64,000 nt of DNA from Chrysemys picta bellii (GCF_011386835.1 NC_088793.1:71114001-71178000); one strand, 5' to 3'. Shown: positions 21,501 through 64,000, numbered from the stretch's first letter. A program made the numbers and translations. Notes: generated by a model not told the origin, from the sequence alone.

Positions 21501-24500
21501 CCATTCCAAGTCAAAAAAAACAAAAAGGGAAACTGAATCATCTAGTGAAAGAAATGATAAAAGTAGTAAGAAGTCTGAGGAGAAAGGTTTAGCTCCCAAA
21601 AGATCTTCCAGTAAGAGGACTGAATTGCCTGAGAATAAAGATCCTTCAACTTCCTCCACGTCGCCACGTAGTCTATATGCCAAAAACATCATTAAAAAGA
21701 AAGGAGAAGTAGTTGTTTCTTGGACAAGGTAAGAGTATTGACAGTATACTCTCTTGGTGGAGGATGGGGTCTGGGGACATGTTTGAAGTATGGGGATGAA
21801 AATTAGTTTAATTGGTGACTGAAGTTCCATATTTCTACAGAATAAACAGTAATGGCCACAGCAATGCAAGCCTCCCCCTGTGCTGCTATAAGTTGAGCCT
21901 TCCTCAGCCTTGTTCAGAAAGGACCTCCTAGTTTGTGAGAGTGATCTAGTCTCCATAGCCATTTACTTCTTGATCTCTCTTCTGAGGGTGCCAGTTAATG
22001 GCGCTAGTGGTTGTGTGGGTTATCTTTTTTGTTTTTTAAACCATATTGACATCTGTTCACTGGAAATGGGTCTGAGACACTAACTCATTTCACAATCCAC
22101 TGAATGGCTATTGGAAGATGGTGTTTTTTCAGTCACTTTATGTGGGTTGGAATCAGAAAGGTGTCCTAACGGAAAAGTATTCCATATCTCATAATTTCTG
22201 ATTTATCTAGCCTCCCAGCAGTGATTTTTGTTTTGTTTTGTTTGGAATTACAGATGAAATTCAGTGTTGAGCAAATGAAATTCAGTGTTGATTAATGTAA
22301 AGTAAGGCATATTAGAAACCATAATCCCAACTATATACAAAACGATGGGGTCTAAATTAGCTGTTACCTCTCAAGAAAGAGATCTTGGAGCCATTATGGA
22401 TAGTTCTCTAAAAACATCCTATCAATGTGTAGCAGCAGTCATAAAAGCTAACAATGTTAAGAACCATTAGGAAAGGGAAGATAATGCCTCTATTTAAATT
22501 CATGATATGCACACACCTTGAATATTGCGTGCAGTCCTGGTCACCCCTTCTCAAAAAAGATATAGTAGAAATGAAAAAGGTACAGTGAAGTGCAACAGAA
22601 ATGGTTAAGGGTGTGGAACAGCTTCCATATGAGGAGAGATTGAAAACACCAGGATTGTTCATCTTGGAAAGAAGACAACGATATGATGGTCTATTAAAAT
22701 CATGAATGGTGTGGAGAAAGTGAATAAGGAATTGTTTGTTATTCCTCCTCATAACACAAGAACACAAGGGGTCAGCCAATGAAATTAATAGGCAGCAAGT
22801 TTAAAACAAACAGAAGGAAATACTACTTCATACAACACACACAATCTATGGAACTCGTTGCCAGGGGATATTGTTAAGGCCAAAAGTACCAAAAGTATAA
22901 CTCGGTTCAAAGTAGAATTAGATATGTTCATGGAGGAAAGGTCCATCGATGGCTATTAACCAGGATGGTCAGGGATGCAGCCCAGTTTTCTGAGTGTCCC
23001 TGAACCTCTGACTGCCAGATGCTGGGGCTGGACAGCAGGAGATGGCTCACTTGATAATTGTTCTGTTCTGTTTGTTCCCTTTGAAGCATCTTAGAGAGAC
23101 AAAGTAGGTCAGGTAATATCTTTTATTATTGGGCCAACTTTTGTTGGTGAGAGTGACAAGCTTTCGAGCTACACCGTGCTGCTGTTCAGGTCTGGGCTTG
23201 TGTGGCTTGAAATTTTCTATCTCTCTCTCCAACAGAAGTTGGTCCAAAAAAGAGATTACCCACCTTGCCTCTCTAATATTTGGGGATCAACACAGATGCA
23301 GCTGCACTGCATACAACTTTGAAGCATCTGATGTTGGCCACTGTCAGAAGACAGGATACTGTGATAGATGGACCATTGGTCTGACCCAGTATGGCCCTTT
23401 TTATGTTCTTGTATAACACTCCTAAATTTTTAACATGAAACCTTTTGACCTAACCATATTTTGTTTTATTTTGAAGTTCTCATTGATTTCTTCAGAAAGT
23501 TAGTTGTTCCTACAAGTGTGTGATTTTTAAAATCAAATATAACTGTTGCTTGAAACAAACAAATCAGTTAAGACAGGGGTGGCCAACCTGTGGCTCCAGA
23601 GCCACATGCGGCTCTTCAGAAGTTAATATGCAGCTCCTTATATAGGCACCAACTCTGGGGCTGGAGCTACAGGCATCAACTTTCCAATGTGCCAGGGGGT
23701 GCTCACTGCTCAACCCCTGGCTCTGCCACAGGCCCTGCCCGCACTCCACCCCTTCCTGCCCCTCCCCTGAGCCTGCAGTGCCCTCGCTCCTCTCCCCCAG
23801 AGCCTCCTGCATGCCTCGAGACAGCTGATCAGGGAAGGAGGGGGAGGCCCTGATCGGAGGGAGGTGCTGGGGGGCTGCTGCTGTAGTACTGTGGCTCTTT
23901 GGCAATGTATGTTGGTAAATTCTGGCTCCTTCTCAGGCTCAGGTTGGCCACCCCGAGTTAAGATGTTGAGAGTGCGCTACAATTTATGATTTATGAAATC
24001 TGTTCTAATTCAAATGCCTGAAGCTTTCTCCTCCTGCTGAACTACCTCCTAAAAGATTATGAAGAGTTCATTTTAAATAGCTAGTCATCACATAAGTTTA
24101 ATTTTATATACTTTGAGTTCTTGTGGAATTTCTAAATAACATACTTTGCACTTGTTGGCATGTAGAACATTTCATCCAAAGATTTCAAACAAACAACTGA
24201 CTCCTCACAGCCACTCTGTGAAGGTGGTATATATGCCCATTTTACAGATGGCTACACTGAAGCCTTGGCTACACTGGCGCTGTATAGCGCTGCAACTTGC
24301 TGCTCTCAGGGGTGTGAAAATGCACCCCCCCTCCCCCGAGCGCAGTGCTGTAAAGCGCCAGTGTAATCAGCACCTGCAGCGCTGCACGTTCGCTCGCAGC
24401 GCTGCAAGCTATTCCCCTCTGAGAGGTGGAGTACTTGCAGCGCTGCGAGAGAGCTCTCTCAGCACTGGCAGCGAGACTACGCTAGCGCTTCACAGCATTG

Positions 24501-33484: not shown

Positions 33485-34675
33485 CTAACTCATCCCAGCC
33501 AGGGCTTTGTCAAGCCGGGCCTTTAAAACCTCTAAGGATGGAGATTCTACCACCTCTCTAGGTAACCCATTCCAGTGCTTCACCACCTTCCTAGTGAAAT
33601 AGTTTTTCTTAATATCCACCCTAGACCTCCCTCACTGTAACTTGAGACCATTGCTCCTTGTTCTGTCATCTGCCACCACTGAGAACAGCCTACCACCAAT
33701 CCTCTTTGGAACCCCACTTCAGGTAGTTGAAGGCTGCTATCAAATCCTCCCTCTTTCTTCTCTCCTGCAGACTAAATAAGCCCAGTTCCCTCAGCCTCTC
33801 CTCATAAGTCATGTGCCCCAGTCCCCTGGTCATTTTCATTGCCCTCCGCTGGACTCTCTCCAATTTGTCCTCATCCTTTCTGTAGTGGGGAGGGGGCCCA
33901 AAACTGGACGCAATACTCCAGATGTGGCCTCACCAGTGCCAAATAGAGGGGAATAATCACTTCCCTCGATCTGCTGGCAATGCTCCTACTAATGCAGCCT
34001 AATATGCCGTTAGCCTTCTTGGCAACAAGGCACACTATTGGCTCATATCCAGCTCCTCGTGAACTGTAATCTCTGGTCCTTTTCTGCAGAACTGCTGCTT
34101 AGCCAGTCGGTCCCCAGCCTGTAGCAGTGCATGGGATTATTCCATCCTAAGTGCAGGACTCTGCCCTTGTCCTTGTTGAACCTCATCAGATTTCTTTTGG
34201 CCCAATCCTCCAATTTGTCTAAGTCACTCTGAACCCTATCCCTACCGTCCAGTGTATCTACCTCTACCCCCACATTAGTGTCATCCATGAACTTGCTGAG
34301 GATGCAATCCATCCCATCATCCAGATCATTAATGAAGATGTTGAACAAAACCGGCCCCAGAACCGACCCTTGGGGCACTCTGCTTGATACCGGCTGCCAA
34401 CTAGACATCAAGCCATTGAACACTACCCATTGAACCCGATGATTCAGCCAGCTTTCTATCCACCTTACAGTCCATTCATCCAATCCATACTTTTTTAACT
34501 TGCTGGCAAGAATACTGTGGGAGACTGTATCAAAAACTTTGCTAAAGTCAAGGTATATCACATCCGCCGCTTTCCTAATATCCACAGAGCCAGAGCAATC
34601 AGGTTGGTCAGGCATGACTTGCCCTTGATGAATCCATGTTGACTGTTCTGATCACCTTCTTCTCTTCCAAGTGCT
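33485..34675 (-). mobile_element. CR1 LINE ORF2 (reverse transcriptase) fragment
   Basis: ORF 34043..34615: DVIYLDFSKVFDTVSH, VPQGSVLGPVLFNIFINDL, SKFMDDT (from FADDT); truncated at both ends. Confidence 0.93.
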
Positions 34676-45100: not shown

Positions 45101-45409
45101 ACCAATAAGTGAGGAAACAGCTTCAAAAGTTTATTGCTGAAAACAACCTCTAAGGGCTTAGTACAATCTTGCTTTTGCATCTTTCACCCCCCTCCTTAAT
45201 ATGATGTTAATTTTGTGTGTGTATTAATGAGCCATTGATTGGAAAACTCATGAACTTCTAAAATCTCTTCCCGTATGGGTGTATCATAAAGAAATATGAA
45301 CAAACATTATTGAACACAGCTGAAAATCTCCGGTTCCTATAGAAATGCAGCTTAATGTGGGATGCTTTAATGACATGGGATTTTTCATTTCAGACATGAG
45401 CCTCTGATG

Positions 45410-46939
45410 ATGGGGGATTGGAACTTGCTAGGCAGCATCCTCGAGGAAGTGCACATCCACTCCACCATCGTGGGAAAAATCTGGCTCACTATCCTTTTCA
45501 TCTTCCGGATGCTGGTGCTGGGAGTGGCTGCTGAAGATGTTTGGGATGACGAGCAGTCTGAATTCATTTGTAACACTGAGCAACCTGGCTGCAGCAATGT
45601 CTGTTATGACAAAGCCTTCCCCATCTCTCTGATCAGATACTGGGTGCTTCAGATCATCTTTGTCTCTTCCCCATCCCTAGTGTACATGGGACATGCACTT
45701 TATAGACTTAGGGCCCTTGAGAAAGAGAGGCAGAAGAAGAAAACCCATCTGAGAGCCCAGCTGGAAGAGCTGGAGCCGGTCCCGGAGGAGCACAAGAGAA
45801 TGGAGAGGGAGCTGAGGAAGTTAGAAGAACAGAAGAAAGTGAACAAAGCGCCCTTGAGAGGGTCCCTATTGCGCACCTACGTCCTGCATATCTTGACCCG
45901 CTCAGCGGTGGAAGTGGGCTTTATGATAGGTCAGTATCTTTTATATGGGCTTCAAATGTATCCCCTCTACAAATGCACTCGTCCTCCGTGCCCTAACACG
46001 GTGGATTGTTTTGTGTCTAGACCCACAGAGAAGACCATCTTTATGATTTTCATGCATAGCATCGCAGCCGTCTCCCTGTTCCTGAACATCCTGGAGATTA
46101 TCCACCTGGGGATAAAGAAGATAAAGAAGACCCTGCATGGGAGGCAGAGAAGAGAGGCAGCGATGGCAGAGGAGACAAGCATTTGCACCTTGAAGAAGAA
46201 CTCAGTGGTGCAGCAAGTTTGCATCATGAGCAATTCCTCCCCCCAGAGCAGCTATAAACTGTTGCCAAACCAGCAGGGTGGGCTGCCTGTTTACCTGCCC
46301 CCAGTACAGGGATACAAAGTGCTTCAGGCACCTGCTGATCACTGCCAGAGGCCAGGAGGGATGGGTGCTGAGCAGCGCCGGTGCAGCACAGACAGGCCTA
46401 GAAGCGAGCAGCACCATGGACAGGTCCCTCGTCTCTACAAGCACCCGGAGCACCCCCGGGAAAGGGAGCAGCACTACAGACAGCTCCCCAACCAGCACCT
46501 AGGACAGCCATCCCGACACCCTTCCTCCAGCAGCGAGGAGACCCACAAGCAGCCCCAGCAGGGCATCGAGAGCTGCCCAGGGAGCGAACAGCACATCCCG
46601 GAGCCACCCAGGAATGCTGTGCAGCCGGCCAAGACCCCCACTAGTGCCGGTCCGCTGGAGATTCCCCAAGCCCTCCGCAATGTACTCCGCAAACACAGCC
46701 GGGTGGGCAGCTGCAAAGACTACGGGGACGATCGCGGTGACTCTCCAGACAGCGGGCACTATCAGGGCAATCGCAAGGCCAGCTTCCTGTCCAGGGTGCT
46801 GTCTGAGAACCAGCTGGCCAGTGACTCGGAGAGCTCCGACTCCAGGAACGGCTCCAGCTCTGAAGCCAAATGCAGAGAGGAGAGCAGCCCACCCATCACC
46901 CCACCACCCCCTTCTGCAATGGGACGCAGAATGTCCATG
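45410..46939 (+). CDS. GJA10: Gap junction alpha-10 connexin (Cx62/Cx57 orthologue), main coding exon; unspliced reading ends at TAG 46969
   Basis: [19 protein letters not shown] start; E1 cysteines [14 protein letters not shown] and E2 cysteines [12 protein letters not shown]; 4 TM segments; acceptor ttcatttcag|45394; position between CASP8AP2 and BACH2 distinguishes it from GJA9. Confidence 0.93.
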
Positions 46940-48149
46940 GTAAGTAACGCCAAGTGTCCTGCTCTCTAGTGTGAGTTACTGCTCTTTGGAAGGTGTCTGA
47001 GCCTTAGACAGGCCTCAGGATGGCCAGGCTGTGGCTGGGGAGTTGTTTGGATACAGTGACAAACGACATACCTGGCCTCATGCTAGTAGAGGGCCAGAGC
47101 CATCAATGGATAAATGGCAAAGGGATTGAAAAGAAAAACACGCCATTATTTCCTATACATGCCTCACAATCCCTGGAGGTTTCAAATCAAACTATCTCTC
47201 TGCTTAATTGGGATTGTCTTTTGCCTCTAAAGTGAATATTATCAGTAACAGATCATTCATCATTTTATTGGCTTTGGTCACTGAGGTTTCTTATATATTT
47301 AAACTATATAAATATATCCCCCAATTGATCTTTAAAGGATTTTACCATATCCTAGTAGAGGTTCATTCCAGTACAAGAAATTAAATTAAAATCCTGTCCC
47401 CACTGAAATCAATGAGAAAATTCCCCTCAGCTTGAGGGGGCAGGATTTCTCTTGGACTGTATCTTTGGGTTAAACTATTGCCTAAATTAGATTGTTATGT
47501 CTTTATAAAAAAATGTAAAATTTCTACTAGATTAGGGTTTTTTTTTGCCATAAAACACTGAATAATACAGCAAGTGGGTAATTTCATATTTAGCAACTGT
47601 TCATATTCCAAAACCACACAAGCTGTCTGAAAATAGCTTGTTTACTTTCGATTTTAATAAACAATTGTAATTTGGATCCAGATGCCAACAAAGTTGCATT
47701 TTAAAATAATTTAAGCTCAGCGGTTGCAAACCCTTAGTGAGGCTCACTGGCATGGGGGGGGGGGCGCACAGATTTCAATGAGAATACTCCAGTAAGAATG
47801 GATTTGCAGACCTTCAGATACTATCTTATACATTCTGAGGCAAAAATGATTTTAAAAGAAAACAAGCTTAATTTCAAAACACTGTGGGCCCTCTAACATG
47901 TCATTCCATTCCCCCCTATTCTTTAATAACTACCCTTTTTACACGTCTGAACCTCTGCCAAACAAGCAGAAAGTATATTTGTACATTATTCAGCACATTA
48001 CCATTTATATCCGCCAGTTTCAATTGTGCCAGAGTTTCTATAACCCATATAGACAATCAGCAAATACCATACAGAAGAAAATATTCATTCTCTTAAATAC
48101 AGTATCATCATTTTCCCTTTGTTGTTTCCAAGATTGCCTGGAGAGAGGG

Positions 48150-50330: not shown

Positions 50331-52037
50331 CAGTCAGGAAAAAATTGGACCTTAAACACAGATGTAGCACAAAGTTCTTCAACATCTGGAGTACCTCTAA
50401 GCAATACTGTCCTAAACTGAGTTTGCCACTTGGGATACAGCTCTGTGCTCCTGAATGCTAATGCATTGCTCTGGGTCAGCTCAATTATATTTGCAAAATA
50501 ATAAATTTCATCACCAAATGTGGGACTCAGACCAGCCATTGAGCAGAGACAGTCCAGATTAGTCAAGCTGTCTAAAGAACTCCTGTCTGAAATTTGGTAG
50601 AGACTAAGAGCCATTCCTTTGCTTCATGTACAGCCATGGCATAAGAATTTTAAAAATCTTTACTCAGCTTTTACCCAAGACTTTTACTATGAGCACCCTA
50701 CCACTTCATTTGTCAGAGGTGATTCATAAACCAAGGTAAGCTGTAAGAGTAAACCTGGGGAAAAGAACATCAAGGGGACACCGGTAGGGAAGGCCAAAAG
50801 ATTGTTAAAATATCCTCTGGACAGAGTGATTCTTTGGAGAAACAACATTTTCCCTCAGAGCTCTCTGAAAATCCTTTAGTTCCATTATCCTATAAGGCCA
50901 GACCACCAAAACGGGCCCTTCATTCTGACAGGAGAGAAGTGCTACAGCCACAAAGTTGGGAGAGAATATTCACTCCATGACACAGGTATAATTTTCAGTT
51001 GCCTTTACCTGAACCAAACACAACAACTACAGCATGACTTGCTGTAGGAGTGAGCTTGCAACAAGCTAAGATAATCTCATAGCTACCATTGTTGTCAAGA
51101 AGTCCTCATCTGACTCAGGGAGTTTGTCATCCATGTGGATGCTGATGTCAACACGAACAATCAGCCTCAGAGGTTCCAAAACCACAGTAGTGAGGAATTT
51201 CATCAGCTCCAACAGAACCTTTGCAGTGAAGCAGGGCAATCGGGACATGGATAGGAGGACATCTTAACCCCTGCCCAGGACTCACATGGAAGATGTACAC
51301 CGAGCTTTTCTGGGCCCAATCTGCCCTCAGTTACACAGCTATAACCCCCCCCCCCCATTTTAATCAAGGGGGATTACAGCCATGTAACTGAGGAGAAAAT
51401 GGAATCCTGCCTCAGGGCCAGATCCTGCAAATCTTCCTCACATCAGTGGTCCTCCCTTGGACAAGAAGTCACACTGACATCAATGCTAATGACCCATTGG
51501 CTTCAACACAATTACATTCATGAGTGAGGGTTTACTGAGGCTTCAGTCCTTCCTATCTACACTAGTGATATTTTAACCTTTGGGTTTACTGTGATATTAA
51601 CTAGATCAGCCACAAAGTAGACCAGTGAAGGACCTGATCCTGTAAACCTTTATGCCTGTAACTTTACTCTCATGAGGAGGCCTATTGATTTCAGTAGAAC
51701 TTCTCCCATGTCTGTGTCCAGGAGCAAGCGAGTGCAATGTACTTGTCTGCACTGAATGCCAGGCAACTGGGAGCTATTTGGTTCATGGTGTAGGAATTAT
51801 CTGAAACTTCTCAATGGGGAGCAGAAAATGAGGTATCAGAATTCTCCCTTGAAACAGTGAAGAAGGGGAGAGAGGAGAAATTTACTTTCCAAGCAGTCAT
51901 GAGTGGAAGGGCAAGATCCCTTACCCTTTCTGACTGGGACACAGCAGGAACGAAGATAAAGAAAAGAGGAGCTAATGCACGGGATAGCATTATAGTGTAG
52001 ACATGCCCTATTTGAGCTTGATCCCATTAGTTGCTAA

Positions 52038-52704
52038 GGGTATGTCTACACTATAAACTTATGTTTATAAACTATGTTAGGTCCATTTACAGCCCTCACA
52101 GTAATTACCCAGTAGGGAGCGGAGAGCCTGGCGGGGCAGCTGGGCTCCTGGCGGAGAGCTCTGCGCCTGGTGTCCAGTCAGCTGCTCCATTCCCGCTGGG
52201 GAGGAGGGAGCTGAGAAGCCTGGTGCAGCTGCCCCATTCCCGGCAGGGAGTGGAGAGCCTGGGGGGTGGAGGGAAGGGCAGCCAGGCTTCTGGGGGGGAG
52301 ATCCGTGCCTGGAATCTGGTCAGCTGCTGTGCTCCCAACGGGGAGCTGGGAGCCTGGGCGGCAGTGCAGATTGGAGTGGGGAGGCTGGCTCGGAGCAGGG
52401 AGTCAGGATCCCAGGGGGAAGCAGAGCTCCCTACAGGGAGCCTGGGCAGCAGCCCAGCTTGAAGCAGAGACTGGAAATTTGGAAACTGACAAGAATGACC
52501 GCTAATAGATGTAAGTAACGCAGTGTCTTACAGGGACACTGTGCCGCCCTAACTACACTGACATAAGCCCTACACCTCTTGTGGAAGTGGAGTTATGATG
52601 TTGGTATAGTAGGCCACTTACATTGGCAGGAGCAAGGCTGTAGTATATACACTGACATAATCCGGTTGACGTAAGCTGCCTAACACTGTAGTTTAGACCA
52701 GACC
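52038..52704. mobile_element. PIF/Harbinger-type non-autonomous element
   Basis: Ends gggtatgtctacacta / tagtttagaccagacc; TSD taa/tga. Confidence 0.7.
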
Positions 52705-53835
52705 TGAGTGTCCTCAATCTTCAGTGAAGATAATGGGAGTTGCATGTGCTCAGAACCTCATACGGTCAGGCCCAAATTGGATTTCTGATTTTCGTTTGCC
52801 AGGGAGAAGGTATCAGTGTGTGAAATCCTGGCCCTACTGAAGTCAGTGGGACTTGTCCCCCCGCTGCTTACGTCTCCATTTAGCTTTGGGTTATTTCCCC
52901 ACTGGGCAAATGGCTAGTAGTGACTGGAGAAAATTCAGACAGCTGCAGAGCCTGCTACTCCGCTTGGACTCTTACACACAAATGGTCACCCACCCAATGG
53001 AAACGACTGTATATTAAAATTATGTTATGGGTCTGTTTGATATTCAGAACAGCATGAATATGCCAGCTAAGCCCCCTCAAGACACAGCATTGGGATGAGA
53101 AATGAGCAAAGTTGCTCTGTTCTACTCAGATGTTGGAAAAGCTTGAAACGTTAATTTTTTATGGTTGTGTTCCTCCATCAGCTCTTGCTATTATTTTTCA
53201 TGCAGTTTGTTTCAATGTGACTGTCTTAATTCCTGCATGCTCTGGATTATTTATATGCTGCAAACTGAACTCTGCCCAGGAGTGCTCCAATGTAGTTTGT
53301 GATTAAGACAGGTGAAGTACCAAGGGCCTGTACAGTTTACTTGATCAATTAAACTAGCCATCCAGCAGGCTAACAGACCATGCAGGCTCAAAATGACAAA
53401 CTTGTGGGCTGATAAGAAATTGGCACTCAGGGCTCTCCTGTCTGAGGACTGTGTATATTAATACAGACCAGGCTGATTTTTAGAAACTGGAGCTCTGCTG
53501 AGTGTAGCTTTATCCAGGCATGTCTAGCAAACCTACAAAAAAGTTGTACATTCATTTGCTTGTATGTTTCCAGCATCAGGACTGCAGGATTGGGCCCTTC
53601 AGTAGAGTTACAGCAGTGATTAACTTGGTCTTTTATGTATAAATACAATAGGGACTTTCTTGTTACAATTGCAAAAGGCAGTATAATGTAAATGTATTAA
53701 AACAAACAGATTTTTTTAAAATTCCAACCATATTTTGAGGGAACCTGGGTTAGTAACGTTGGTTTAAAAAAACCAAACCTCTGTCTTCTTTAAGACCATT
53801 CAGTCTCATTCTCTCTTTCTCTTGTTATCTTTCAG

Positions 53836-53874
53836 AGCATGCTTCTCGAACTATCATCTATCATGAAAAAATAA
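53836..53874 (+). CDS. GJA10: GJA10 terminal coding exon SMLLELSSIMKK*
   Basis: Long pyrimidine tract then ttcag|AGC ATG CTT CTC GAA CTA TCA TCT ATC ATG AAA AAA TAA; phase 0 matches donor ATG|gtaagt at 46940; spliced product is 522 aa. Confidence 0.88.
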   Translation, partial: SMLLELSSIMKK

Positions 53875-54348
53875 TGCCAGTCTGGGGACAAGAAACAAAC
53901 CAAAGAATTGGGTACAAACCATTCCTCAGCAGGAAGCAAAAAAAGCAACCTCTCCGTTTATTCTGAAGCTAAAAAGCATGATGCAGTTCATGGAAGAAAG
54001 CCCTTGCTTTACACACCGCCAAGTTTTATGCCAGCACATGTAGCAACGTAGCCTGACTCCCATTGTGGGCTGACAACCTGCTTCAAAACTCAAGATTTCA
54101 CTCACATATACCAAGCAGCAGCTGCTTCATGTGTGCAGTAACTGCAGAAATAGCCTTGTGTCCTTGGAGAACATTTGGGAGGCACAACTTGTTGTTTAGG
54201 TCTGTAGTGTTTATCTCTATAAGATGCAAGATCTATACTTTCAAAGGAGTGGTAAGAGCAAAGATATTTGCAAGGAAGGGTTCGTTAGATAGGAAGGTTT
54301 TCTGAAGGATTCTTTTACATCTCACTCCCCGGGGCCTACTAGCCAGTG

Positions 54349-54354
54349 AATAAA
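54349..54354 (+). terminator. Candidate GJA10 poly(A) signal
   Basis: AATAAA ~475 nt after the spliced stop codon. Confidence 0.35.
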
Positions 54355-56326
54355 AGATGAAAGCAGCACACCAGGACTTTGTAGCACAGTCCTCCTGGTT
54401 TAACAAAGAGACCCGAATCCAAGCGGCTGCTCAGCAACCTGGGCTAAAGTGAAGCTCACATTCTTTTAGGGATTAATTGCCACTCTGACATTGTCTCCCT
54501 CATTGCCAACACCCTCACCGCAAAAACACAGTACACACAATCAAATTGGCTGATTGCTTTTTAATGTGCAGCTTATGCATTCTTCTTCAGTTTGCTAAAT
54601 GAGAGATCCTTAAAACATCTGCCCGGGATCATAAAGATCTCATTCCTTTGTTCATTCCATCAGTTCCTATATGGGCTGTACAAAAGAAAAAAACATGGCC
54701 TCACTATTTGATAGGAAATAGCTGCTTTGGATTATTAGATTTCTAATACGTGCACGACCCAGGACAATCGCACTTCCAACCCATGTATCTTAAAAATAAG
54801 GCACCTTCTCCCAGACTATCCATATCACTGTCCCCCATCACGTGCTCATCAACTCCTCCTATTCATTATTCAACGACACACTCTCATCTCTTGCCTTTGT
54901 TATCAATGCTCCATTTGTTCCAGTGGAGAATCACATTTTTAAGCAAGCTAGTTGGTTGGTATGTCAGTCTCCCTAATCATGCAAAGCCTTTGTGGTTCTG
55001 ACAGCTGCACCGAAATAGTAGTAAAAAGCATCCCCCCCCGCCAAAAAGCGCCAAGTGTAAAAAGCGATTAGGCTGCTCACTGAACTTGCATAGTGCTTTT
55101 ATCCTAGTTTTAATGACTTCCATCCATACTCCTCAAGGATGGATCATTGCCTCAGTTACACACTGTTTGGTTAAGCTATTGCTTGTTTTTTTTTTTTTTT
55201 TTTTTTTTTAAGTGAAAAATGAAACCGAAAACCCCAGCCATTAAAGAAGCAGCCGTGACTTCTTACGGATGGATAAACAAAGCTTGACTATAGACAGGGA
55301 GTAGAGTATGTGCTGTATGGAGATATAAATGATGAAGTATCTTCTGACAAACTTGAGAGGAAAGGGGCCTTTGCTGATGTATGTTCCAGCTTTTCCAGCA
55401 AGATTCTGGAGTGTAGTATCACTGTTCTTTTTTTCTGAAGGAGAGGGGTTATTTTACTTATAAGGACTCTGCTGGTTTAAAACTCACAGGCCAGGTTTAG
55501 TCCTGTAGAAGCAAAAGGGTGCAAGGGGCAGCGGCACTGGCAGAGGCATTTATCCTCAAAACTGGGCAGTCTGTGGTGTACTTTTTTGTCTATAAAAAGA
55601 CTATGGCTTTATAGGAGCTCTCCCCGATGGAGGCTTCCTGGGCAGTGCGCTGAATTAGTGTGCATCTCCCAGCGGGCCTAGCTAGGTCACACCCACTTTG
55701 GCCCTGATTCAGCAAAGCATTGAGCACGCTCTTAAGTCAAACTGAATCAAGGCTTTTGTGGGTTGTGCTGGCCAGCTCCCGGCCTCCAGATGGACTTGGG
55801 ATTGCAGGCAGCTCACATTGCTATCCCCTTCTTTCTGGCAATCTTAATGTGATGGCGGGGGGGGGGGGGGAGGAGGGAGTTGCAGCCTGGAGACTTTAAA
55901 AAAACGCATTAAACTTCCTTGTCTGAGTTACCACCACCTTAACAGTATTAAAACAATATAATTTGCTTTCTTTTGTTTACGCTCTTTATTTTTTGCATTC
56001 CTCTCAGCTTGAACAATGCTAACACATGAGCCAGACTCATTTCCAGGTTTCCATTCATTAGTGGAATGCTGCAATGTTTGGGCTGCAAATGCTGCAGGGA
56101 TTTTTGTTTGCTTGTTTGTTCTGGGTTGGAATTTTTGCTTTGTTTTGCATTTCCATAGAAACAATTCTATTTTCTCTTAGGTTTTGTTAAAAAATACAGT
56201 GGTTACTTAAGTGATGTTGAGAATGCAGGATGAGAACTAGCTTGAATCAGTACTATGGGAATATAGTTATGAGAGTTACTCCGTACACTCAGTCCTACAT
56301 CAACACACCTCTGGTAGTCCTGCAAT

Positions 56327-56578
56327 CGGGGTCGGCTCTAGCATTTTTGCCGCCCCAAGCAGAAAAAAAAAAAAAAAAAAAAGAAGCCGCGATCGCAATC
56401 GGCGGCAGCTCTACCGCCGCTTCATTCTACAGCGGCAATTCGGCGGCAGGGCCTTCGCTCTGAGAGGGAGTGACGGCCCCGCCGCCGAATTGCCGCCAAA
56501 CGGCCGGACATGCCGCCCCCCTCTTCATTGGCCACACCAGGCACCTGCTTGCTACGCTGGTGCCTGGAGTTGGCCCTG
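56327..56578. mobile_element. GC-rich hAT MITE
   Basis: TIRs cggggtcggctcta / tggagttggccctg; perfect TSD cctgcaat. Confidence 0.9.
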
Positions 56579-57026
56579 CCTGCAATGGACCTGCCTGCAG
56601 TACAGATAGCCAGTCGTACTGTACTCAGCCTAAACGGGTGGAGGTTTTGTCATGTGGTCAAAGATTAACTATGTTTCCCATATCCTCCAGAAATTAACCA
56701 TTACTCTTGCATTAATAAATAGGACATTAATTTCAGAGGCAAGAAAAGTTGATATACAATACATAATGATATGTCTTTATTTCATCAACAGAAATGGTGT
56801 CTAGACAAAATTCAGTTAACACTAGCAATTCAAATGAATGGAAAGTTTTTTTTTTTTGCACAATACTGTATTTACAATGAGTAAATGAAGTTTTAAATTC
56901 ATTAGTTCATAACAATGCTTTTTTTTCCAAAAAGGTAAAAATTCTTAGTAACAGAGAATAAGCATCAACAGCCATCTCGTTTATACAATAAAAATCACAA
57001 GAAACCACAGTCACCTAGAAAAAAAT

Positions 57027-57158
57027 NNNNNNNNNNNNNNNNNNNNNNNNNNNNNNNNNNNNNNNNNNNNNNNNNNNNNNNNNNNNNNNNNNNNNNNNNN
57101 NNNNNNNNNNNNNNNNNNNNNNNNNNNNNNNNNNNNNNNNNNNNNNNNNNNNNNNNNN
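57027..57158. other. Assembly gap (132 N)
   Basis: Run of N. Confidence 1.
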
Positions 57159-60100
57159 GAGAGGTACAGAGGATTATACAGGTAGATATGTGTGAAAACT
57201 GTCCATATACTGTTTGACCTGTGGAGGAAGAGAAGAGGGGTTGTACCCCCTTGCATACACGGATAAAACCCTGTTTTGAATATGGCCTCTGAAATCTGTA
57301 AGGCATATATTAGAGGTGCACTTGTATCCAACTGGTTCTGGAACAAACTCTTAGGGCAATTCCACTCTTGAAATCAAAAGGTGATGCTTGAAATTAATAG
57401 CAAATAACAAGCATCGAAGATCACCAAAGCGTTTAGTATAATTTCTGCTAGTCTGAAGGATCCAGATACTTTCGGTCAGAGCATGAGTAGCGAGTACAGT
57501 ATCTAAACACATACAATTCTTTCAGTTATAGTACAAATGCAGGATAACATTGTCTCAGGAAAATGCAGTGTTCTAAATATGATGGGTCCAAGAGAGAACA
57601 ACAATCCAGATAATGAAATTGCTCCCCCATCACACCATAAACTTTAGGGTTGTTGGCTTGGCCCTGTTATAGAGATGGGTTCAGCTGCGAAACCCAGAGT
57701 TCAGATTCTAGACTCTCCCAAAAGTCTGTGGATCCAAGCATCCCCGTTTGGTTTTGGAGCCATCTCCAGTTCTAAGAAGTGGACAAAATCAAATACTGAC
57801 AATTCTGTCTTATCCACTTTTTCAAAGTCAGTTATTTTCTGTATGCCCGTAATCAGCCCACAGCGACAATTTCGGCATTGCATGTGTGTTTTTTAATCAT
57901 GTGGGTGGATTACACCTACATAAACGGCTATTTCATATAAAGTTAACAAAACTGGAATAAGAATGGGATTTACCCAACTGTTATTTTTCCTATTGTTTGA
58001 TTTGGCTAATTATTATGTCACAGTTTTAAAAAAAGCATTTTAAGCATTCCTCACTGCCAAAAAAGGGGATTTTATTTGCCCAATGGCAGCATTATATGTG
58101 TATTACAGTAAAAAATTTGATATAAATACTACCTATCTTGGTGGAGTGTAGGAAAATACTGTACACTTTGTCATTGCAAGTAATGCCATTATATCTTTCA
58201 CACTAAAGAGAATAATTTATTATTCTACAATCCACCAACAATAGATTTTTTTATATAAAGAGTCACTTTTTGAATGCACATGTATATACACATATATTGT
58301 ATTCTGCAGCATCAAGTCTGATGCCTGAGTCATGAAATATTCCAAACAGTATTATAAATCTACATATATGTATTATAAACAGGTGAACATACACACACTA
58401 ACTGTAATTACATATATAACTAAGTTTTGGATTGCCTTGGCAGAGACAAACTACAATACAACCTTGATGTGTAGAGAAAATACACATTATATGTTGTAGG
58501 AGGCAACAGAATATAAATTCTTTGTGTTATTTTTATCTAAAGTAAGGTGTAGCTAGAAACATTAAGACATGCCATACTCAGCAGATCCTCTTGACTACAT
58601 CATCAACTCCATTGCTCTTACTGAAGCTAAACCTTTTCTAGACAGAATCTAAAAGACATACATTTAAAATGATGCAAATGTAGACTATGGAACCTGCTAA
58701 CAAACCATCACAAAACGTATTTCAAATTTGAAGGAGATGAAGATTGCTCCTCATTTAAATCAAGGTAATCAGTTTAACTGTGGAGGACTTGAAGTAGATT
58801 AGAATGCAAGCTTGTGTAGGCTTGACTAATATTCCCTATGTTTTATGTTAAAATACACTACAGTTCTGTTCTCTAATCCCAGATTTATTTCTATTTTAAC
58901 ATAAACAGCAATGGAATATATGACACCAGTGAGGATGTGATCTAACTTCTGGAATTACAGTGTTTCATCATGTTTTCCTTAAAAGGTCAAATTTTCTCTT
59001 ATAGGATTATGCCAATTCCAGCATACAGGTTTGTTTTCTTTCATTGGCAATCATAAGGTTAAATATTAAAAATCTAACTATACAAATATGCATTTCTATT
59101 TAAGCTTTTTAAAATAAAGACTCAACAAAATGTTGAAGTTAGGATTAACAACCATACTATCAGCATTAATAATTTCTCTGGCAGCCAGTTATTCTTTATT
59201 GACAAAGTTACTTTTATCTAGTTCCCACTCTCCCTTTTAAAGAGAGGTAGCAGTTGGCGTACTAATCACTGTGGTTTGCCTTTGCAACACAACATTTTTT
59301 ACTTCCTGGGGGTGGGGAGGAGGAATACAAGGATTAGATCCAAAAATATAGTGCATCTTAAAAGCAGCATATATCTTAGAAAGACATAATAAATTACGCA
59401 TACAATATATAAAATAATAGTTTTATACTGCAGCATCAAACTCTGACGCCTGAGTCATCATATGTTAGGAAGTCTGTGATATAAATACTGAGATGTCCTG
59501 ATAACATGGCTGACCTTTTTTCCCCCGCTACCTCTTTGTTCCAGAATCAGCTTTTAATGAACTTTAATTACTTCCAAGGCACCTCCAGATAACGCAGAGA
59601 AACAAATACATTATATAGTGTAGTACTCATTTGACACAAGTATAATAAGCCTAAATGAAATGAGGTTTTCTGGCAATACAAGTATAGCAAAGGTAAATAA
59701 AAAGGAGAACTAGATGTACTGGACAAAGCTAGATGGCTCAAGAATTCACACTCATGCTATATTGGTGCAGCATTCAATATGACAACCCGGCCCAATCTTG
59801 CACAAAATTTCAAAGCAATACATTAGAGACCAGAAACTGCAGCTTTCTTCATGAATAACTGCATGATCCTTATTTAAAAAGATACATTTTTGTTGGCTAA
59901 ACCTCTTAATTTGCTAAATATTGTAGTTAACTTTTTTTTAAAATTGGATTTTTGGTCAACTGTTTTAATATCAGATTATTTATTTCAACTCATGTCCAGT
60001 TCTGAAGCTAATTCTCCTAGATGTTTCCCTTTAAAGTTAACCCAATAACAGTTTTGAGAGCCACATGGTTCAGAAGAGCAAAAACATATACGCGTAAATA

Positions 60101-61754
60101 CAGGTCAAGGAAGCAATGACAAATCAGTCACTTCTAACGGTGAAGAATGAAATCAAACATCATGAAAAGCTTGAAAAGCGAGCGAGAGAGAGAGACTTAT
60201 TTGAGCAGTGGTTTTAAATATCAGTTCCCATGAAAAAGAAAATCAGGAGGCCCAGCACCAGAATGAGCCGGGTCGATCCCAAGAGCTGCAGCACATGTTC
60301 TGTGGGTGGCTTTTTTGTTTGTTTGTTTTTAACCGTTGGAATGAGGTCAAGAGTACCAGTTGCACATGAGTCGTTAGCAGGGTAAATCTTCATGTCAGGA
60401 TGCTAGTTCAAACTTTGTTTTATACTCATAAAACATTCCATCTATCTATATAGGTGGTCACTTAAAAATAAAAAAAAGGCAACAGAAAGTCTTTAAAATA
60501 CTGTCAGTTGACAAAAAAAAATAGCTATGATGCTATAATGTGATTCACATTTAGTTTTAAACTCTAGCTTTCACTATGGTCTCACAGAAACAAGACATCT
60601 CTGCCAAACACAGAGTTGTTCTGCAACGTCAATGAATTCAAAGGAAAATCAAATTCCCCAGAAAGAGCTTCTAGCTCAGTTTGCTGCACAAAATGGCTGG
60701 GGGTGGGAAGTGTTCCAATATATTTAGATCTCTATCTTTTAAAAGAAAGGATGACTTTCCCCCCTTCTTCAACTGTGTGAATTAGGAATTTGTGGCATTT
60801 GGATATCTCTGAACATTTAAAGATAAGGATTTTGCACAGAAACGGTTAATACTTAAACATAAATTATGATTTAAAAAAAAAATCACATATCCTACATTAT
60901 ATACTAATTTCTTTGTGCATGCAGAAAAAACATTTTTCAACAAACATGGCACATGCTATATGCATTTCCTCCTCCGTAGCTAGGCTACCGTCGTTTGGGA
61001 GAAGAGAGCAGAAGCAAGACTGGCAAGTCCGTGACGGCCCATGAGCACAATCTCAAAACACAAAAATAGAGGAGAGAGGGAGCTGATTCCTCCTCCAGGA
61101 AAAGATGCTGATTTACTGAGTGCCTCAAAAGAGCACCAGGACACACCCGTAGTGTAAACATTAGCACAACAGAACCTATTGTCACTTAGTGCTTGTGAAA
61201 AGCTGCTTTTTCAAACAGGTGTGCCCAGCTGGTCAATTTTGCAGCAAGAGTGAACAATGTCAATCTGTACAGCATGGGTGGTGTTGTCCAGGATAAAGCC
61301 TCAGTACTAGCCACACACCCTGGCGCAAATAGGGAAAAGAATCACAAAATATAATTCAATACACTTATAATACTACTAATACTGATACTATTACTACTAA
61401 TTCATAATAAAAATGTTAGGAGGACGTTTTTCTGCCTATGCTGTACATAGATGTTATGCTTGGAAAGCTGCTGTCCCACGCTATCATAACACAATTCACT
61501 GATTACCTGTTTCACCGTATCACTTGAGATACAAATTCAATACAGTTACAACTAAGCCAATTCTCTGAGCAGTCTCCTGTGAGACAGCACTCTTTTAGAA
61601 GTTGACTTGTGCTGATGGCAATGCTGTAGAATAAGAGGATTCTATAACACAACACTTCAAATGGTAAGCAACCAAATCAGGTAACGTTTTGCTCCTTAGG
61701 GTATACAGCATTCACTTGACTTCTGTAAGCAAACATCTGTAAGTCTCAGTTATG

Positions 61755-61903
61755 GGCCTGATCTTGCAATTCTTTCCTACATGACTAGTCAGATTTCAAT
61801 AGGCCTGATTCTGATCTCACACCAGTGAGAATCAAGAGTAAGTCCACTGAAGTAAATGGAGTAACACCCTGGTAAAACTGGTGGGAGATCAAAATCAGGA
61901 CCA
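61755..61903. repeat. Old palindromic MITE-like repeat in the BACH2 3' UTR
   Basis: ggcctgattctgatctcacaccagt..ccactgaagtaaatgg..actggtgggagatcaaaatcaggacc imperfect palindrome. Confidence 0.5.
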
Positions 61904-61915
61904 ATGCTACTATAC

Positions 61916-62083
61916 CAGTTGTTTTCAACCCACGGCCTGCTTGTGGCCCAATCAGCATATAGCTGCAGCCCATGTGACATCCTCAGGGCCATACAGGTAG
62001 TATATATATTTTATGGATGTGACCCACATAACACAGAGAGCTGCATATGTGGCCCAGAATGGTAAGTAGGTTGAGAATCATTG
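61916..62083. mobile_element. hAT MITE inside the BACH2 3' UTR
   Basis: TIRs cagttgttttcaacc / ggttgagaatcattg; TSD tactatac/gactatac. Confidence 0.8.
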
Positions 62084-63314
62084 GACTATACGTCTGAGTA
62101 GCGACAACTTGCCTGGGAAAGGGTGCAGATTCGGGGTCTGATCCAAAACCCACTGAAGTTGATGGGTGTGTTTCCATTTACTTCAATGGGCTTTGAGGAC
62201 CTTGGACCCCAATTTAGGAACATATGCTTGACTGACCCACTTTTTATATTTTATTAAAGAGCAAAATACATCTTACCATATAGTCCAAAATCATAATTAA
62301 CAGCATTTAAACTTTGTTTGGGAAAGAAAAAGAATATAAAAATATTCAAGCAGATTTTCTTTTACACATTATAGGGTGAATTCAGTATTTGGCAAGATTG
62401 TTCTTCCTACATAATCATCTCCTGAGTGTTTTTTCTATTAGCTAAAACTTTATAATTTTCTTTCAACTATAAAGCAAAGAATACAGTATACTCAAGTTAT
62501 ACTGAAGTCACAACTTCATTATGAAAAGAGGTTTGACCAGAAACTCAGTGCAAGTGGCAAAGTTGACCATTACTGTACAGTATCTGCAAGAAAATAAAAT
62601 AAATCCACATTGCTCAAATGGCACAACATGGCTGTGCCAAAATCAAAAACCTGGATATAATTAAAATCTCAGATAAGCTTCCAACATTAAAATTTTATAA
62701 ATAAGTACAAACTGAATGATATTGCTGAACTGTGAACCAAGAAAAAAAATCATGTAACAAGTTACCAAACTAGTTCTAGCATTAAAGACAAAAAAGGAAT
62801 GTTGGAACTTGTTTATACAATATAAATGAAAGTTTCCAGTTGTAGGATGAGAAAAATTGAGGCATGCAGGGACTTTTGCATATGGAGATATATATTTTAT
62901 ATATATTATATATAATATGTACAGTTTAGCTATAAAACTTTGATGTGTAAAGAAGCTGTCTTCAATGAAAAATTGAACATTCAGAGGAAATTCCTGAGTT
63001 AGGGTTTTGTGACATGGGTCACTGAGAAAAAAGCTGCAGTTGGGTCCTCAGAGGTGTTATGTCCATCCCTGTTAAGATTGAAATTAACATACAAAAACAG
63101 ACAGTGTTGCCACTGTTTAATTCCCTGCCTGAGCAAGGGATAGCACCATTGTGAAGATAACTCCTGCTTGTAGAGAGGAGGGAATACTTAAAAACAGTAT
63201 TGCTGCTAAGACCACTGTAGTGTGCACCAAATACGTTCTTCTAGACAACAAATGAATACTGCCACTGGCTGACTGAAGAACACCTGACCAGGTGTAATGT
63301 AAGGTTACAAGTCA

Positions 63315-63794
63315 CTAGGTGTAATCTTTCCTAGGCTGCTCATCTGTTGTACATTTATCAGTCATTTCCTGACAGAAGTCTACTGTCACTGTTTGGCTAC
63401 TCTGTTCTAGAGGGAGCTCTCTTTCTGAGTAAGTACCTTGGGCAGCTCCATCAAGCCCTCTTCCGGTTGTACAATTTTCGGAGACGTTGTTAGGTAGCCA
63501 GTGAGCTCCTAGTTGCACAGAGTCTTGCTCTGAGCAGCACTGCATGCCTTCCCCAACACACTGGGATGTCACTAGGTTTTGCTCTACTCCAGCTGGTGAA
63601 GGGTTGATATTGGTGGCTGTTGGTAGATCCATAGGCCTGAGAACAGGGCAATATCGGTGCAGGGCTTGGATCTGTTCAGGGCTCTGCATATCCCTACACA
63701 CTTCTTGGGAAAGACATGAGAAGTTATCTAACAATTCTCCCATGCATGCTTTCAGCTGATTCCTTTCAGACAGTAATTTCTCTTTCTCACACAC
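63315..63794 (-). CDS. BACH2: BACH2 last coding exon (end of bZIP zipper and C-terminal cytoplasmic localisation signal)
   Basis: VCEKEKLLSERNQLKACMGELLDNFSCLSQEVCRD..HRYCPVLRPMDLP..QTVTVDFCQEMTDKCTTDEQPRKDYT* is the BACH2 C-terminus; acceptor tttcag| at 63795; the first codon is GTG=Val, not a start. Confidence 0.97.
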   Translation of the reverse strand: MCEKEKLLSERNQLKACMGELLDNFSCLSQEVCRDMQSPEQIQALHRYCPVLRPMDLPTATNINPSPAGVEQNLVTSQCVGEGMQCCSEQDSVQLGAHWLPNNVSENCTTGRGLDGAAQGTYSERELPLEQSSQTVTVDFCQEMTDKCTTDEQPRKDYT

Positions 63795-64000
63795 CTGAAA
63801 AAGAAAGAAAGCATCTTAGCTTCATAAAAGGCCACTTACTGCAGTTAAGGCTCTATTCCAGTTTTACATGTTGCTTTATCCACTCTGTAAAATTACAGAC
63901 AACATTCTGATTTTGTATGGCACAGGATAAGTCACAGATACATGCAATACTTTGTCCTCTACCTGCTCTTCATGGACTTGTTGCTTGCATGCTACCATCT

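What the first reader, a model, noticed from the sequence alone, without database searches (positions are those of the whole stretch)
58304..59458. Duplicated 30-nt element in the BACH2 3' UTR: RNA hairpin plus TGAGTCA (MARE/AP-1) core
Seen: ctgcagcatcaa-gtctgatgcctgagtcat (58304-58333) and ctgcagcatcaaactctgacgcctgagtcat (59428-59458), 28/31 identical, 1.1 kb apart, with unrelated flanks and no TE hallmarks. On the mRNA strand both fold: GCAUCA-GACU-UGAUGC and GCGUCA-GAGUU-UGAUGC. The one stem change gives a G-U pair only on the BACH2 sense strand and the other differences fall in the loop, as expected for a selected RNA structure. Both also carry TGAGTCAT, the core of the site bound by BACH2-sMAF. 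Inference: an undescribed cis-regulatory stem-loop and/or an autoregulatory DNA site.
Basis: partly seen in the sequence, partly recalled or inferred. Interest (0 to 1): 0.7.

Follow-up and report, generated by a model that had tools for sequence, protein, structure and literature searches.

The report
Duplicated conserved element in BACH2 3'UTR
Two copies of a 31-50 base element in the tail (3' UTR) of a turtle's BACH2 gene are real and strongly conserved in a distant reptile or bird relative; they most likely act in the RNA as a small hairpin carrying a microRNA-103/107 target site, not as a BACH2/MAF DNA site.

Summary
The two copies (58304-58333, 59428-59458) are the only ones in the window. 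They extend to about 50 nt (58283-58333 / 59406-59458) and beat all 300 dinucleotide shuffles of the UTR.

They lie on the antisense of the + strand, 3.9 and 5.0 kb downstream of the BACH2 stop codon. Both are upstream of the first polyadenylation signal shared with the orthologue. The window is from a turtle (GJA10 is 96% identical to a sea-turtle protein).

One orthologous locus was recovered, metagenome contig L001, probably avian. It carries both copies at the same positions:
- Copy B sits in a 60-nt exact run, although the UTRs are only 78% identical overall.
- Copy A keeps all 7 stem pairs while 3 of 4 loop bases differ.

New here: on the mRNA strand both copies contain AUGCUGCA, the canonical 8mer site for miR-103/107, overlapping the 3' arm of the hairpin.

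The MARE reading fails. Only the plain AP-1 heptamer is present, and the Maf flanks are out of register. Roquin-type elements are excluded by loop size.

Verdict: a real, constrained 3'UTR cis-element, a new member of a known kind. The mechanism is inferred.

The parts
58304..58333 (-). Copy A core (30 nt). mRNA sense: AUGACUCA + GGCAUCA-GACU-UGAUGCU hairpin + CAG.
   Evidence: The orthologue keeps the stem 7/7, changes the loop GACU to AAUC, and reads CUGUAG where the window has CUGCAG.
59428..59458 (-). Copy B core (31 nt). mRNA sense: AUGACUCA + GGCGUCA-GAGUU-UGAUGCU hairpin + CAG.
   Evidence: It lies inside a 60-nt run (59401-59460) identical in the orthologue L001.
58283..58303 (-). AU-rich extension of the copy A similarity (3' of the core on the mRNA).
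   Evidence: Self-BLAST pair 58283-58333 against 59406-59458.
59406..59427 (-). AU-rich extension of the copy B similarity (3' of the core on the mRNA). It contains UUUUAU.
58305..58312 (-). AUGCUGCA, an 8mer match to the miR-103/107 seed, in copy A. It overlaps the 3' arm of the stem.
   Evidence: The miRNA sequence AGCAGCAUUGUACAGGGCUAUGA was checked in PMC3100319. In L001 the site reads AUGCUGUA, which gives a G-U wobble at seed position 2.
59429..59436 (-). AUGCUGCA, an 8mer match to the miR-103/107 seed, in copy B.
   Evidence: The site is identical in L001.
58326..58332 (.). AP-1/TRE heptamer TGAGTCA (copy A).
   Evidence: The heptamer is kept in L001. The MARE flanks are absent.
59451..59457 (.). 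AP-1/TRE heptamer TGAGTCA (copy B).
   Evidence: The heptamer is kept in L001. The MARE flanks are absent.
59324..59500 (-). Conserved island around copy B. It also holds UAUUUAU (59481-59487) and a second AUGCUGCU (59363-59370).
   Evidence: 13 differences in 180 alignment columns against L001. Both motifs are kept in L001.
58275..58380 (-). Conserved island around copy A.
   Evidence: 14 differences in 106 columns against L001, while neighbouring stretches fall to 44-50% identity.
58071..58076 (-). First AAUAAA downstream of the stop codon that is conserved in L001. Both copies lie upstream of it on the mRNA.
63315..63794 (-). BACH2 last coding exon (C-terminus). The stop codon is at 63315-63317.

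Best explanation
The two copies are an anciently duplicated cis-regulatory element of the BACH2 3' UTR, kept by purifying selection, that acts in the mRNA.

Each copy is a short stem-loop: a 7-bp stem with a 4- or 5-nt loop of free sequence. The 3' arm of the stem plus the next four bases spell AUGCUGCA, a canonical 8mer target site for the vertebrate-wide miR-103/107 family.

The most likely function is post-transcriptional repression of BACH2 through Argonaute loaded with miR-103/107. The hairpin would set or gate access to the seed site, or serve as a docking site for an unidentified RNA-binding protein. The invariant UGACUCA box 5' of the stem has no RNA-level explanation yet.

Shown here: the duplication, its position in the UTR, its conservation, stem retention with loop turnover, and the seed match.

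Inferred: that the region is in the mature mRNA, that miR-103/107 acts on it, and that the stem forms in vivo.
For: - The pair is not a chance match, and there are exactly two copies per species.
- Both copies are present at orthologous positions in L001. That locus shows 87% amino-acid identity in the BACH2 C-terminal exon and 78% identity over ungapped UTR columns. The duplication therefore predates that split.
- Copy B lies in a 60-nt exact run, the longest in the central 5 kb of the UTR.
- In copy A, 0 of 14 stem bases differ between species but 3 of 4 loop bases do (Fisher p = 0.005, a post hoc test).
- All 28 stem cells pair, and the only stem variation is A-U to G-U.
- G-U pairs, including the outer pair, exist only on the sense strand, and the sense strand folds better. 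The L001 copies fold the same way.
- AUGCUGCA is present in both copies. Three such 8mers occur in the UTR against 0.06 expected. The miRNA sequence was verified in PMC3100319.
- A further AUGCUGCU and a UAUUUAU are conserved in the same island.
- Both copies lie upstream of the first conserved AAUAAA.
- Six runs recorded as RNA, two of them polyA-selected, hold 11-35% of the sampled words of 58100-59520.
- BACH2 is listed among the genes with the most predicted miRNA regulators (PMC2374997).
Against: - No pair shows a compensatory change on both sides.
- With one orthologue there is no statistical power for covariation.
- Fold z-scores are only -1.5 to -2.2, and in a 110-nt context the minimum-energy fold of copy B does not contain the hairpin.
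- In L001 the copy A seed match is weakened (AUGCUGUA), so the miRNA site is not strictly kept in both copies.
- The hairpin would partly occlude the seed match.
- Neither the hairpin nor the miRNA site explains the invariant UGACUCA.
- No paper read or listed here links miR-103/107 to BACH2.
Confidence: 0.5

Rival explanations
1. The element acts in DNA. The conserved TGAGTCA heptamers are AP-1/TRE sites of an intragenic enhancer or silencer within the last exon of BACH2. AP-1, BATF or BACH2 itself could bind there (feedback), and the adjacent GCATCA...TGATGC inverted repeat could be a second, dimeric factor site.
For: TGACTCA occurs in the 6.7-kb UTR only at the two copies, and it is invariant in all four sequences. 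Neither the hairpin nor the miRNA site explains it. The MARE bound by BACH2 contains an embedded AP-1 site, and BACH2 is proposed to compete with AP-1 complexes for sites (PMC6959360).
Against: The Maf-type flanks are out of register on both sides, so this is not a MARE. The heptamer is not enriched in the window. The inverted repeat is imperfect in copy B at the DNA level (an A-C mismatch on the + strand), yet that copy is perfectly conserved. The surrounding islands carry strand-specific RNA motifs (UAUUUAU, AUGCUGCU, AAUAAA) typical of UTR regulation.
Confidence: 0.17
2. The similarity is a relic with no function of its own. It would be two leftovers of an old internal duplication, or of two insertions of an ancient mobile element, that sit by chance in slowly evolving parts of a generally conserved UTR.
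For: Large parts of this UTR are very conserved without any duplication, with exact runs of 131, 98 and 82 nt. A weak 23-nt repeat and an AATAAA pair share the same 1124-nt spacing, which hints at a larger old duplication. A genome-wide copy count could not be made.
Against: The similarity between copies ends sharply at about 50 nt, with no excess identity on the diagonal. So only this piece survived in both copies and in both lineages, which is what selection on the piece itself predicts. A 60-nt exact run at 78% background identity has a chance of roughly 0.002 over the UTR (my calculation from the numbers). Only the orthologous locus turned up in 241 million metagenome records, and only a chance hit in the prokaryote genomes.
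Confidence: 0.13
3. The stem-loop is the binding site of a specific structure-reading RNA-binding protein (a decay or localisation factor). On this view the miR-103/107 match is incidental.
For: In L001 copy A the stem is kept while the seed match is degraded. The pattern is a conserved stem with a free loop.
Against: No known family fits. Roquin needs tri- or hexaloops and rejects tetra- and pentaloops, and no Rfam family matches. A loop of free sequence and length gives a reader little to recognise. An exact 8mer in both turtle copies and in L001 copy B is unlikely by chance (about 0.0004 per family per element, by my calculation).
Confidence: 0.2

Closest known systems
Canonical 8mer microRNA target sites (miR-103/107 family) in 3' UTRs
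   Same: There is an exact AUGCUGCA on the mRNA strand in both copies. The local context is AU-rich, the location is a long and heavily miRNA-targeted UTR, and the site is conserved in copy B across a deep split. A second 7mer lies 66 nt away in the same island.
   Different: Conservation covers about 31-60 nt, far more than a seed site needs. Half of the seed match is buried in a stem. The copy A site is weakened in the orthologue. No experimental link between miR-103/107 and BACH2 was found in the papers read.
Structure-gated miRNA sites (for example the PUM1-dependent opening of the miR-221/222 site in the CDKN1B 3' UTR; from my own knowledge, not checked here)
   Same: A miRNA seed match is partly sequestered in a local hairpin.
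   Different: No partner protein site has been shown. The hairpin here is only 7 bp, and no switching has been demonstrated.
Roquin/Regnase-1 decay elements (CDE, ADE)
   Same: A 6-8 bp stem-loop in the 3' UTR of an immune regulator, with stem sequence of minor importance.
   Different: The loops are GACU, AAUC and GAGUU (4-5 nt). They are not YRU triloops or GUUYUA hexaloops, and Roquin discriminates against tetra- and pentaloops (PMC11609897).
Maf recognition element / NF-E2 site, TGCTGA(G/C)TCAGCA, bound by BACH2-small Maf
   Same: It contains the embedded AP-1 core TGA(G/C)TCA.
   Different: The flanking TGC/GCA are shifted by one base on both sides (GCC-TGAGTCA-T; TGACTCA-GGC). Only a plain TRE is present.

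Membership tests
miRNA 8mer target site (miR-103/107) | Perfect complement to miRNA positions 2-8 followed by A opposite position 1, on the mRNA strand | tested here: met
   AUGCUGCA lies at 59436-59429 and 58312-58305 on the minus strand. The miRNA sequence comes from PMC3100319.
miRNA 8mer target site (miR-103/107) | The site lies within the mature 3' UTR | tested here: inconclusive
   The copies are 3.9 and 5.0 kb downstream of the stop codon and upstream of the first conserved AAUAAA. RNA-labelled runs hold parts of the stretch.
miRNA 8mer target site (miR-103/107) | The site is conserved in orthologous UTRs | tested here: inconclusive
   Copy B is identical in L001. Copy A reads AUGCUGUA there. 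Only one orthologue was available.
miRNA 8mer target site (miR-103/107) | Repression depends on the miRNA and on the seed match | not testable with these tools
   This needs reporter assays, AGO-CLIP or miRNA inhibition.
Conserved structured RNA element (stem-loop) | Base pairs are retained across homologues | tested here: met
   28 of 28 cells pair in four sequences. The same hairpin appears in the minimum-energy folds of short windows.
Conserved structured RNA element (stem-loop) | Compensatory (both-sided) changes support the pairs | tested here: not met
   No pair has a change on both sides. One pair shows a one-sided A-U to G-U change.
Conserved structured RNA element (stem-loop) | The fold is more stable than shuffled sequence | tested here: inconclusive
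   Z-scores are -1.5, -1.75, -2.2 and -0.9. The hairpin is lost from the minimum-energy fold of the 111-nt copy B context.
Roquin CDE/ADE | A YRU triloop, or a GUUYUA-like hexaloop, on a 6-8 bp stem | tested here: not met
   The loops are GACU, AAUC and GAGUU. The rule is taken from PMC11609897.
MARE (BACH2-small Maf site) | A TGC or GCA flank directly abutting the TGA(G/C)TCA core | tested here: not met
   The flanks are GCC and T on one strand, and A and GGC on the other. The consensus comes from PMC6959360.
AP-1 / TRE site | The heptamer TGA(G/C)TCA | tested here: met
   Present in both copies and in both species. The heptamer is not enriched in the window.
AP-1 / TRE site | Occupancy by AP-1 or BACH2 in chromatin | not testable with these tools
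   This needs ChIP or CUT&RUN.
Dispersed repeat / transposable element fragment | Many copies elsewhere in the genome with unrelated flanks | tested here: inconclusive
   There are only two copies in 64 kb. The exact-pattern scan of metagenome contigs returned only the orthologous locus. The looser pattern gave one chance hit in a Planctomycete and none in viral contigs. No whole-genome search of this species was possible.
Rfam families | A covariance-model match | tested here: not met
   No hit at the element at E<=1 in 52000-64000.

The most novel reading that the evidence does not exclude
The element would be a previously undescribed, deeply conserved bipartite RNA module, made of a UGACUCA box and a 7-bp stem-loop and duplicated more than 200 million years ago. 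An unknown protein would read it and gate miR-103/107 access to BACH2 mRNA. It could also have a second life in DNA as an AP-1/BACH2-responsive site, giving BACH2 coupled transcriptional and post-transcriptional feedback.
Probability: 0.12. Interest if true: 0.7.

Novelty: new member of a known kind. Interest (0 to 1): 0.42.

Why it matters
BACH2 dosage decides lymphocyte fate (memory against effector cells, plasma-cell differentiation), and BACH2 is a recurrent autoimmunity and lymphoma locus. Its 6-kb 3' UTR is one of the most heavily miRNA-targeted known.

A duplicated element kept intact since before turtles and the L001 lineage (probably birds) separated gives two precise 31-nt targets for reporter and genome-editing tests of post-transcriptional control of BACH2. 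It also offers a clean natural case for asking whether a small hairpin modulates a miRNA site. If the element is only a pair of miR-103/107 sites, it is an ordinary, though well-conserved, addition to the list of BACH2 regulators.

Tried and rejected
- **The look-up of sequencing runs** with the 60-nt exact run alone failed because it held too few sampled words. The 1.4-kb query worked.
- **Read laying**: No read or contig mapping, RNA 3' ends, depth-based copy number or extra species were obtained.
- **Larger tandem duplication**: rejected, since there is no excess identity on the 1124-1126 diagonals.
- **MARE**: rejected on flank register.
- **Roquin CDE/ADE**: rejected on loop size.
- **3' supplementary pairing to miR-103/107**: inspected by eye; there is no CCUG upstream of the seed match.
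- **Other miRNA seeds in the left half**: compared only from memory. Nothing better than an offset 6mer (CUCAGG, miR-125) turned up, so this is not claimed.
- **Planctomycete hit L002**: a chance match with GC-rich, unrelated flanks.
- **Literature searches** for BACH2 with stem-loop, Roquin/Regnase or miR-103/107 found no description of this element.
- **Earlier scan notes** added nothing.
- The N run 57027-57158 was left untouched, and no human sequence was consulted.

Full report
**1. Observation**

The two stretches are in the sequence exactly as quoted: 58304-58333 and 59428-59458 on the + strand.
- Each half of the element occurs only at these two places in the window.
- A self-BLAST of the window extends the pair to 58283-58333 against 59406-59458. 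That is 54 columns at 83% identity with E 2.6e-4, and it ranks sixth among all direct repeats of the window.
- In 300 dinucleotide-preserving shuffles of the UTR, the best direct repeat never exceeded 36.4 bits against 43.8 observed.
- Outside these 50 nt or so the flanks do not align.

**2. Where it is**

The window carries CASP8AP2-like ORFs (12247-14460 and 18838-21732, +), a complete GJA10 connexin (45407-46969, +) and the C-terminal exon of BACH2 (63315-63794, minus strand).

GJA10 is 96% identical to a Lepidochelys cluster and 93% to Chelonoidis, so the genome is a turtle's.

The copies lie 3857 nt (copy B) and 4982 nt (copy A) downstream of the BACH2 stop codon on the BACH2 sense strand.

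Of all AAUAAA and AUUAAA hexamers between the stop codon and the copies, none is kept in the orthologue. The first conserved AAUAAA is at 58076-58071, 228 nt downstream of copy A.

Six runs recorded as RNA, in three studies and two of them polyA-selected, hold 11-35% of the sampled words of 58100-59520. Several very small runs of a closely related organism hold 92-98%.

Direct mapping was not possible. UTR membership is therefore well supported but inferred.

**3. An orthologue**

An exact-pattern scan of the metagenome contigs gave one locus, L001. L001 aligns collinearly with window 63819-56724 on the minus strand, so it is the BACH2 last exon plus 3' UTR of another animal.

Its BACH2 C-terminus has these identities:

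| Compared with | Amino-acid identity |
|---|---|
| The window | 87% |
| A 52-member unnamed cluster (P0002) | 95.6% |
| The lizard Phrynosoma (P0007) | 75% |

The turtle is 80% identical to the lizard. A lineage closer to turtles than lizards are, yet faster evolving, is most simply a bird.

The UTRs are 67% identical counting gaps and 78% over ungapped columns.

**4. Conservation of the copies**

Both copies are present in L001 at orthologous positions, about 1150 nt apart, so the duplication predates the split.

Copy B:
- It lies in a 60-nt exact run (59401-59460). This is the fifth longest run of the whole alignment and the longest in the central 5 kb.
- It sits inside an island, 59324-59500, with 13 differences in 180 columns.

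Copy A:
- It lies in an island, 58275-58380, with 14 differences in 106 columns. Neighbouring stretches fall to 44-50% identity.
- Within copy A the differences are A to G just 5' of UGACUCA, three of the four loop bases (GACU to AAUC), and CUGCAG to CUGUAG. None of the 14 stem bases differs.

A covariance model built from the four sequences finds exactly two copies per species and nothing else in 71.7 kb.

**5. Structure**

On the mRNA strand all four sequences form the same 7-bp stem: G-U, G-C, C-G, A-U or G-U, U-A, C-G, A-U. The loops are GACU, AAUC or GAGUU, and the energies run from -9.3 to -10.9 kcal/mol.

For the hairpin:
- All 28 stem cells pair.
- The only stem variation is A-U to G-U.
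- Both G-U positions are A-C mismatches on the other strand.
- The loop absorbs most of the change (3 of 4 loop bases against 0 of 14 stem bases; Fisher p = 0.005, a post hoc test).

Against, or neutral:
- No pair changes on both sides.
- A single transition favours one strand with prior probability one half.
- Fold z-scores are ordinary.
- In the 111-nt context of copy B the minimum-energy fold uses a different pairing.

The pattern equally fits two conserved linear motifs separated by a free spacer.

**6.

On the mRNA strand both copies read ...UGAUGCUGCAG.... AUGCUGCA is the reverse complement of positions 2-8 of miR-103/107, followed by the A opposite position 1. That makes it a canonical 8mer site.

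The miRNA sequences are AGCAGCAUUGUACAGGGCUAUGA and ...UCA, as printed in PMC3100319.

The UTR holds three such 8mers against 0.06 expected from base composition:
- 59436-59429 (copy B), kept in L001.
- 58312-58305 (copy A), which reads AUGCUGUA in L001.
- 59773-59766, not conserved.

The copy B island also keeps an AUGCUGCU (59370-59363) and a UAUUUAU (59487-59481). That is the usual look of a post-transcriptional control module.

The seed match overlaps the 3' arm of the stem by four bases.

BACH2 is listed among the human genes with the most predicted miRNA regulators (PMC2374997). I found no paper linking miR-103/107 to BACH2.

**7. The DNA reading**

The MARE bound by BACH2-small Maf is TGCTGA(G/C)TCAGCA, with an embedded AP-1 site (PMC6959360). 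The element reads GCC-TGAGTCA-T, and on the other strand A-TGACTCA-GGC. The GC of the Maf flank is displaced by one base on either side, so this is a plain AP-1 heptamer and not a MARE.

The heptamer is no more frequent in the window than in shuffles (8 against 10.2). Even so, within the UTR it occurs only at the two copies, is invariant in all four sequences, and is not explained by the hairpin or the miRNA site. A DNA-level AP-1 function therefore stays open as a minority rival.

**8. Other families**

- No Rfam family matches at the element.
- Roquin CDE and ADE elements need YRU triloops or GUUYUA-type hexaloops, and Roquin rejects tetra- and pentaloops (PMC11609897). The loops here have 4-5 nt.
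- No sign of a dispersed repeat was found. The evidence is two copies in the window, only the orthologue in the metagenome scan, one chance hit in a Planctomycete genome, and none in viral contigs. A whole-genome count in this species could not be made.

**9. Verdict**

The finding is a real, duplicated and strongly constrained element of the BACH2 3' UTR.

The best-supported mechanism is RNA-level: a small hairpin carrying a miR-103/107 8mer site (confidence about 0.5 for this specific reading, about 0.7 for any RNA-level cis function). The BACH2/MAF autoregulatory reading is not supported as stated.

The element is a new member of a known kind, a conserved UTR cis-element or miRNA site, with moderate interest. 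It would rise if broad alignments showed covariation, or if the UGACUCA box proved to be part of a protein-read RNA module.

**Limits**
- Only one orthologue could be compared.
- The N run 57027-57158 was left alone, and no human sequence was used.

Noticed in passing
window 62132-62211 (within 61772-62091 and its surroundings): A palindromic hairpin gives sub-threshold Rfam hits to the avian mir-1803 and mir-1677 families on both strands (E 3e-4 to 3e-3). It sits beside stretches (62091-61992, 61951-61900, 61865-61772) that the turtle UTR has and L001 lacks. This is probably a lineage-specific insertion of a hairpin-forming repeat into the BACH2 3' UTR.
   Followed up: partly
window 62500-63300: The first 0.8-1 kb of the BACH2 3' UTR is 85-100% identical between the turtle and L001, with exact runs of 131, 98 and 82 nt. 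That is more conserved than the adjoining coding exon (77-92%).
   Followed up: partly
window 59766-59773 and 59363-59370: Two further miR-103/107-type matches lie in the UTR. One is an AUGCUGCA 8mer not kept in L001. The other is an AUGCUGCU (a 7mer-m8, also a miR-15/16-type UGCUGCU) kept in L001, 66 nt downstream of copy B.
   Followed up: partly
window 58477-58499 / 59601-59623 and 58071-58076 / 59195-59200: A weak 23-nt repeat (78%) and a pair of AATAAA hexamers share the same 1124-nt spacing as the element. There is no general excess of identity on that diagonal. This is either coincidence or the last traces of a larger old duplication.
   Followed up: partly
window 57027-57158: A run of 132 N lies inside the distal part of the presumed 3' UTR.
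   Followed up: no
window 56755-56837: The reads tool would not lay these places (a filter). They coincide with an 86-nt run identical in L001 and with a conserved AAUAAA at 56781-56776, which is the likely distal end of the UTR.
   Followed up: no
window 34043-34615 (-): A fragment of a CR1-type LINE reverse transcriptase lies between CASP8AP2 and GJA10.
   Followed up: no
L001 (Ga0065711_1031203): A 30-kb vertebrate (probably avian) contig with the BACH2 last exon and 3' UTR sits in a JGI metagenome assembly. It is host or contaminant DNA, not microbial.
   Followed up: partly
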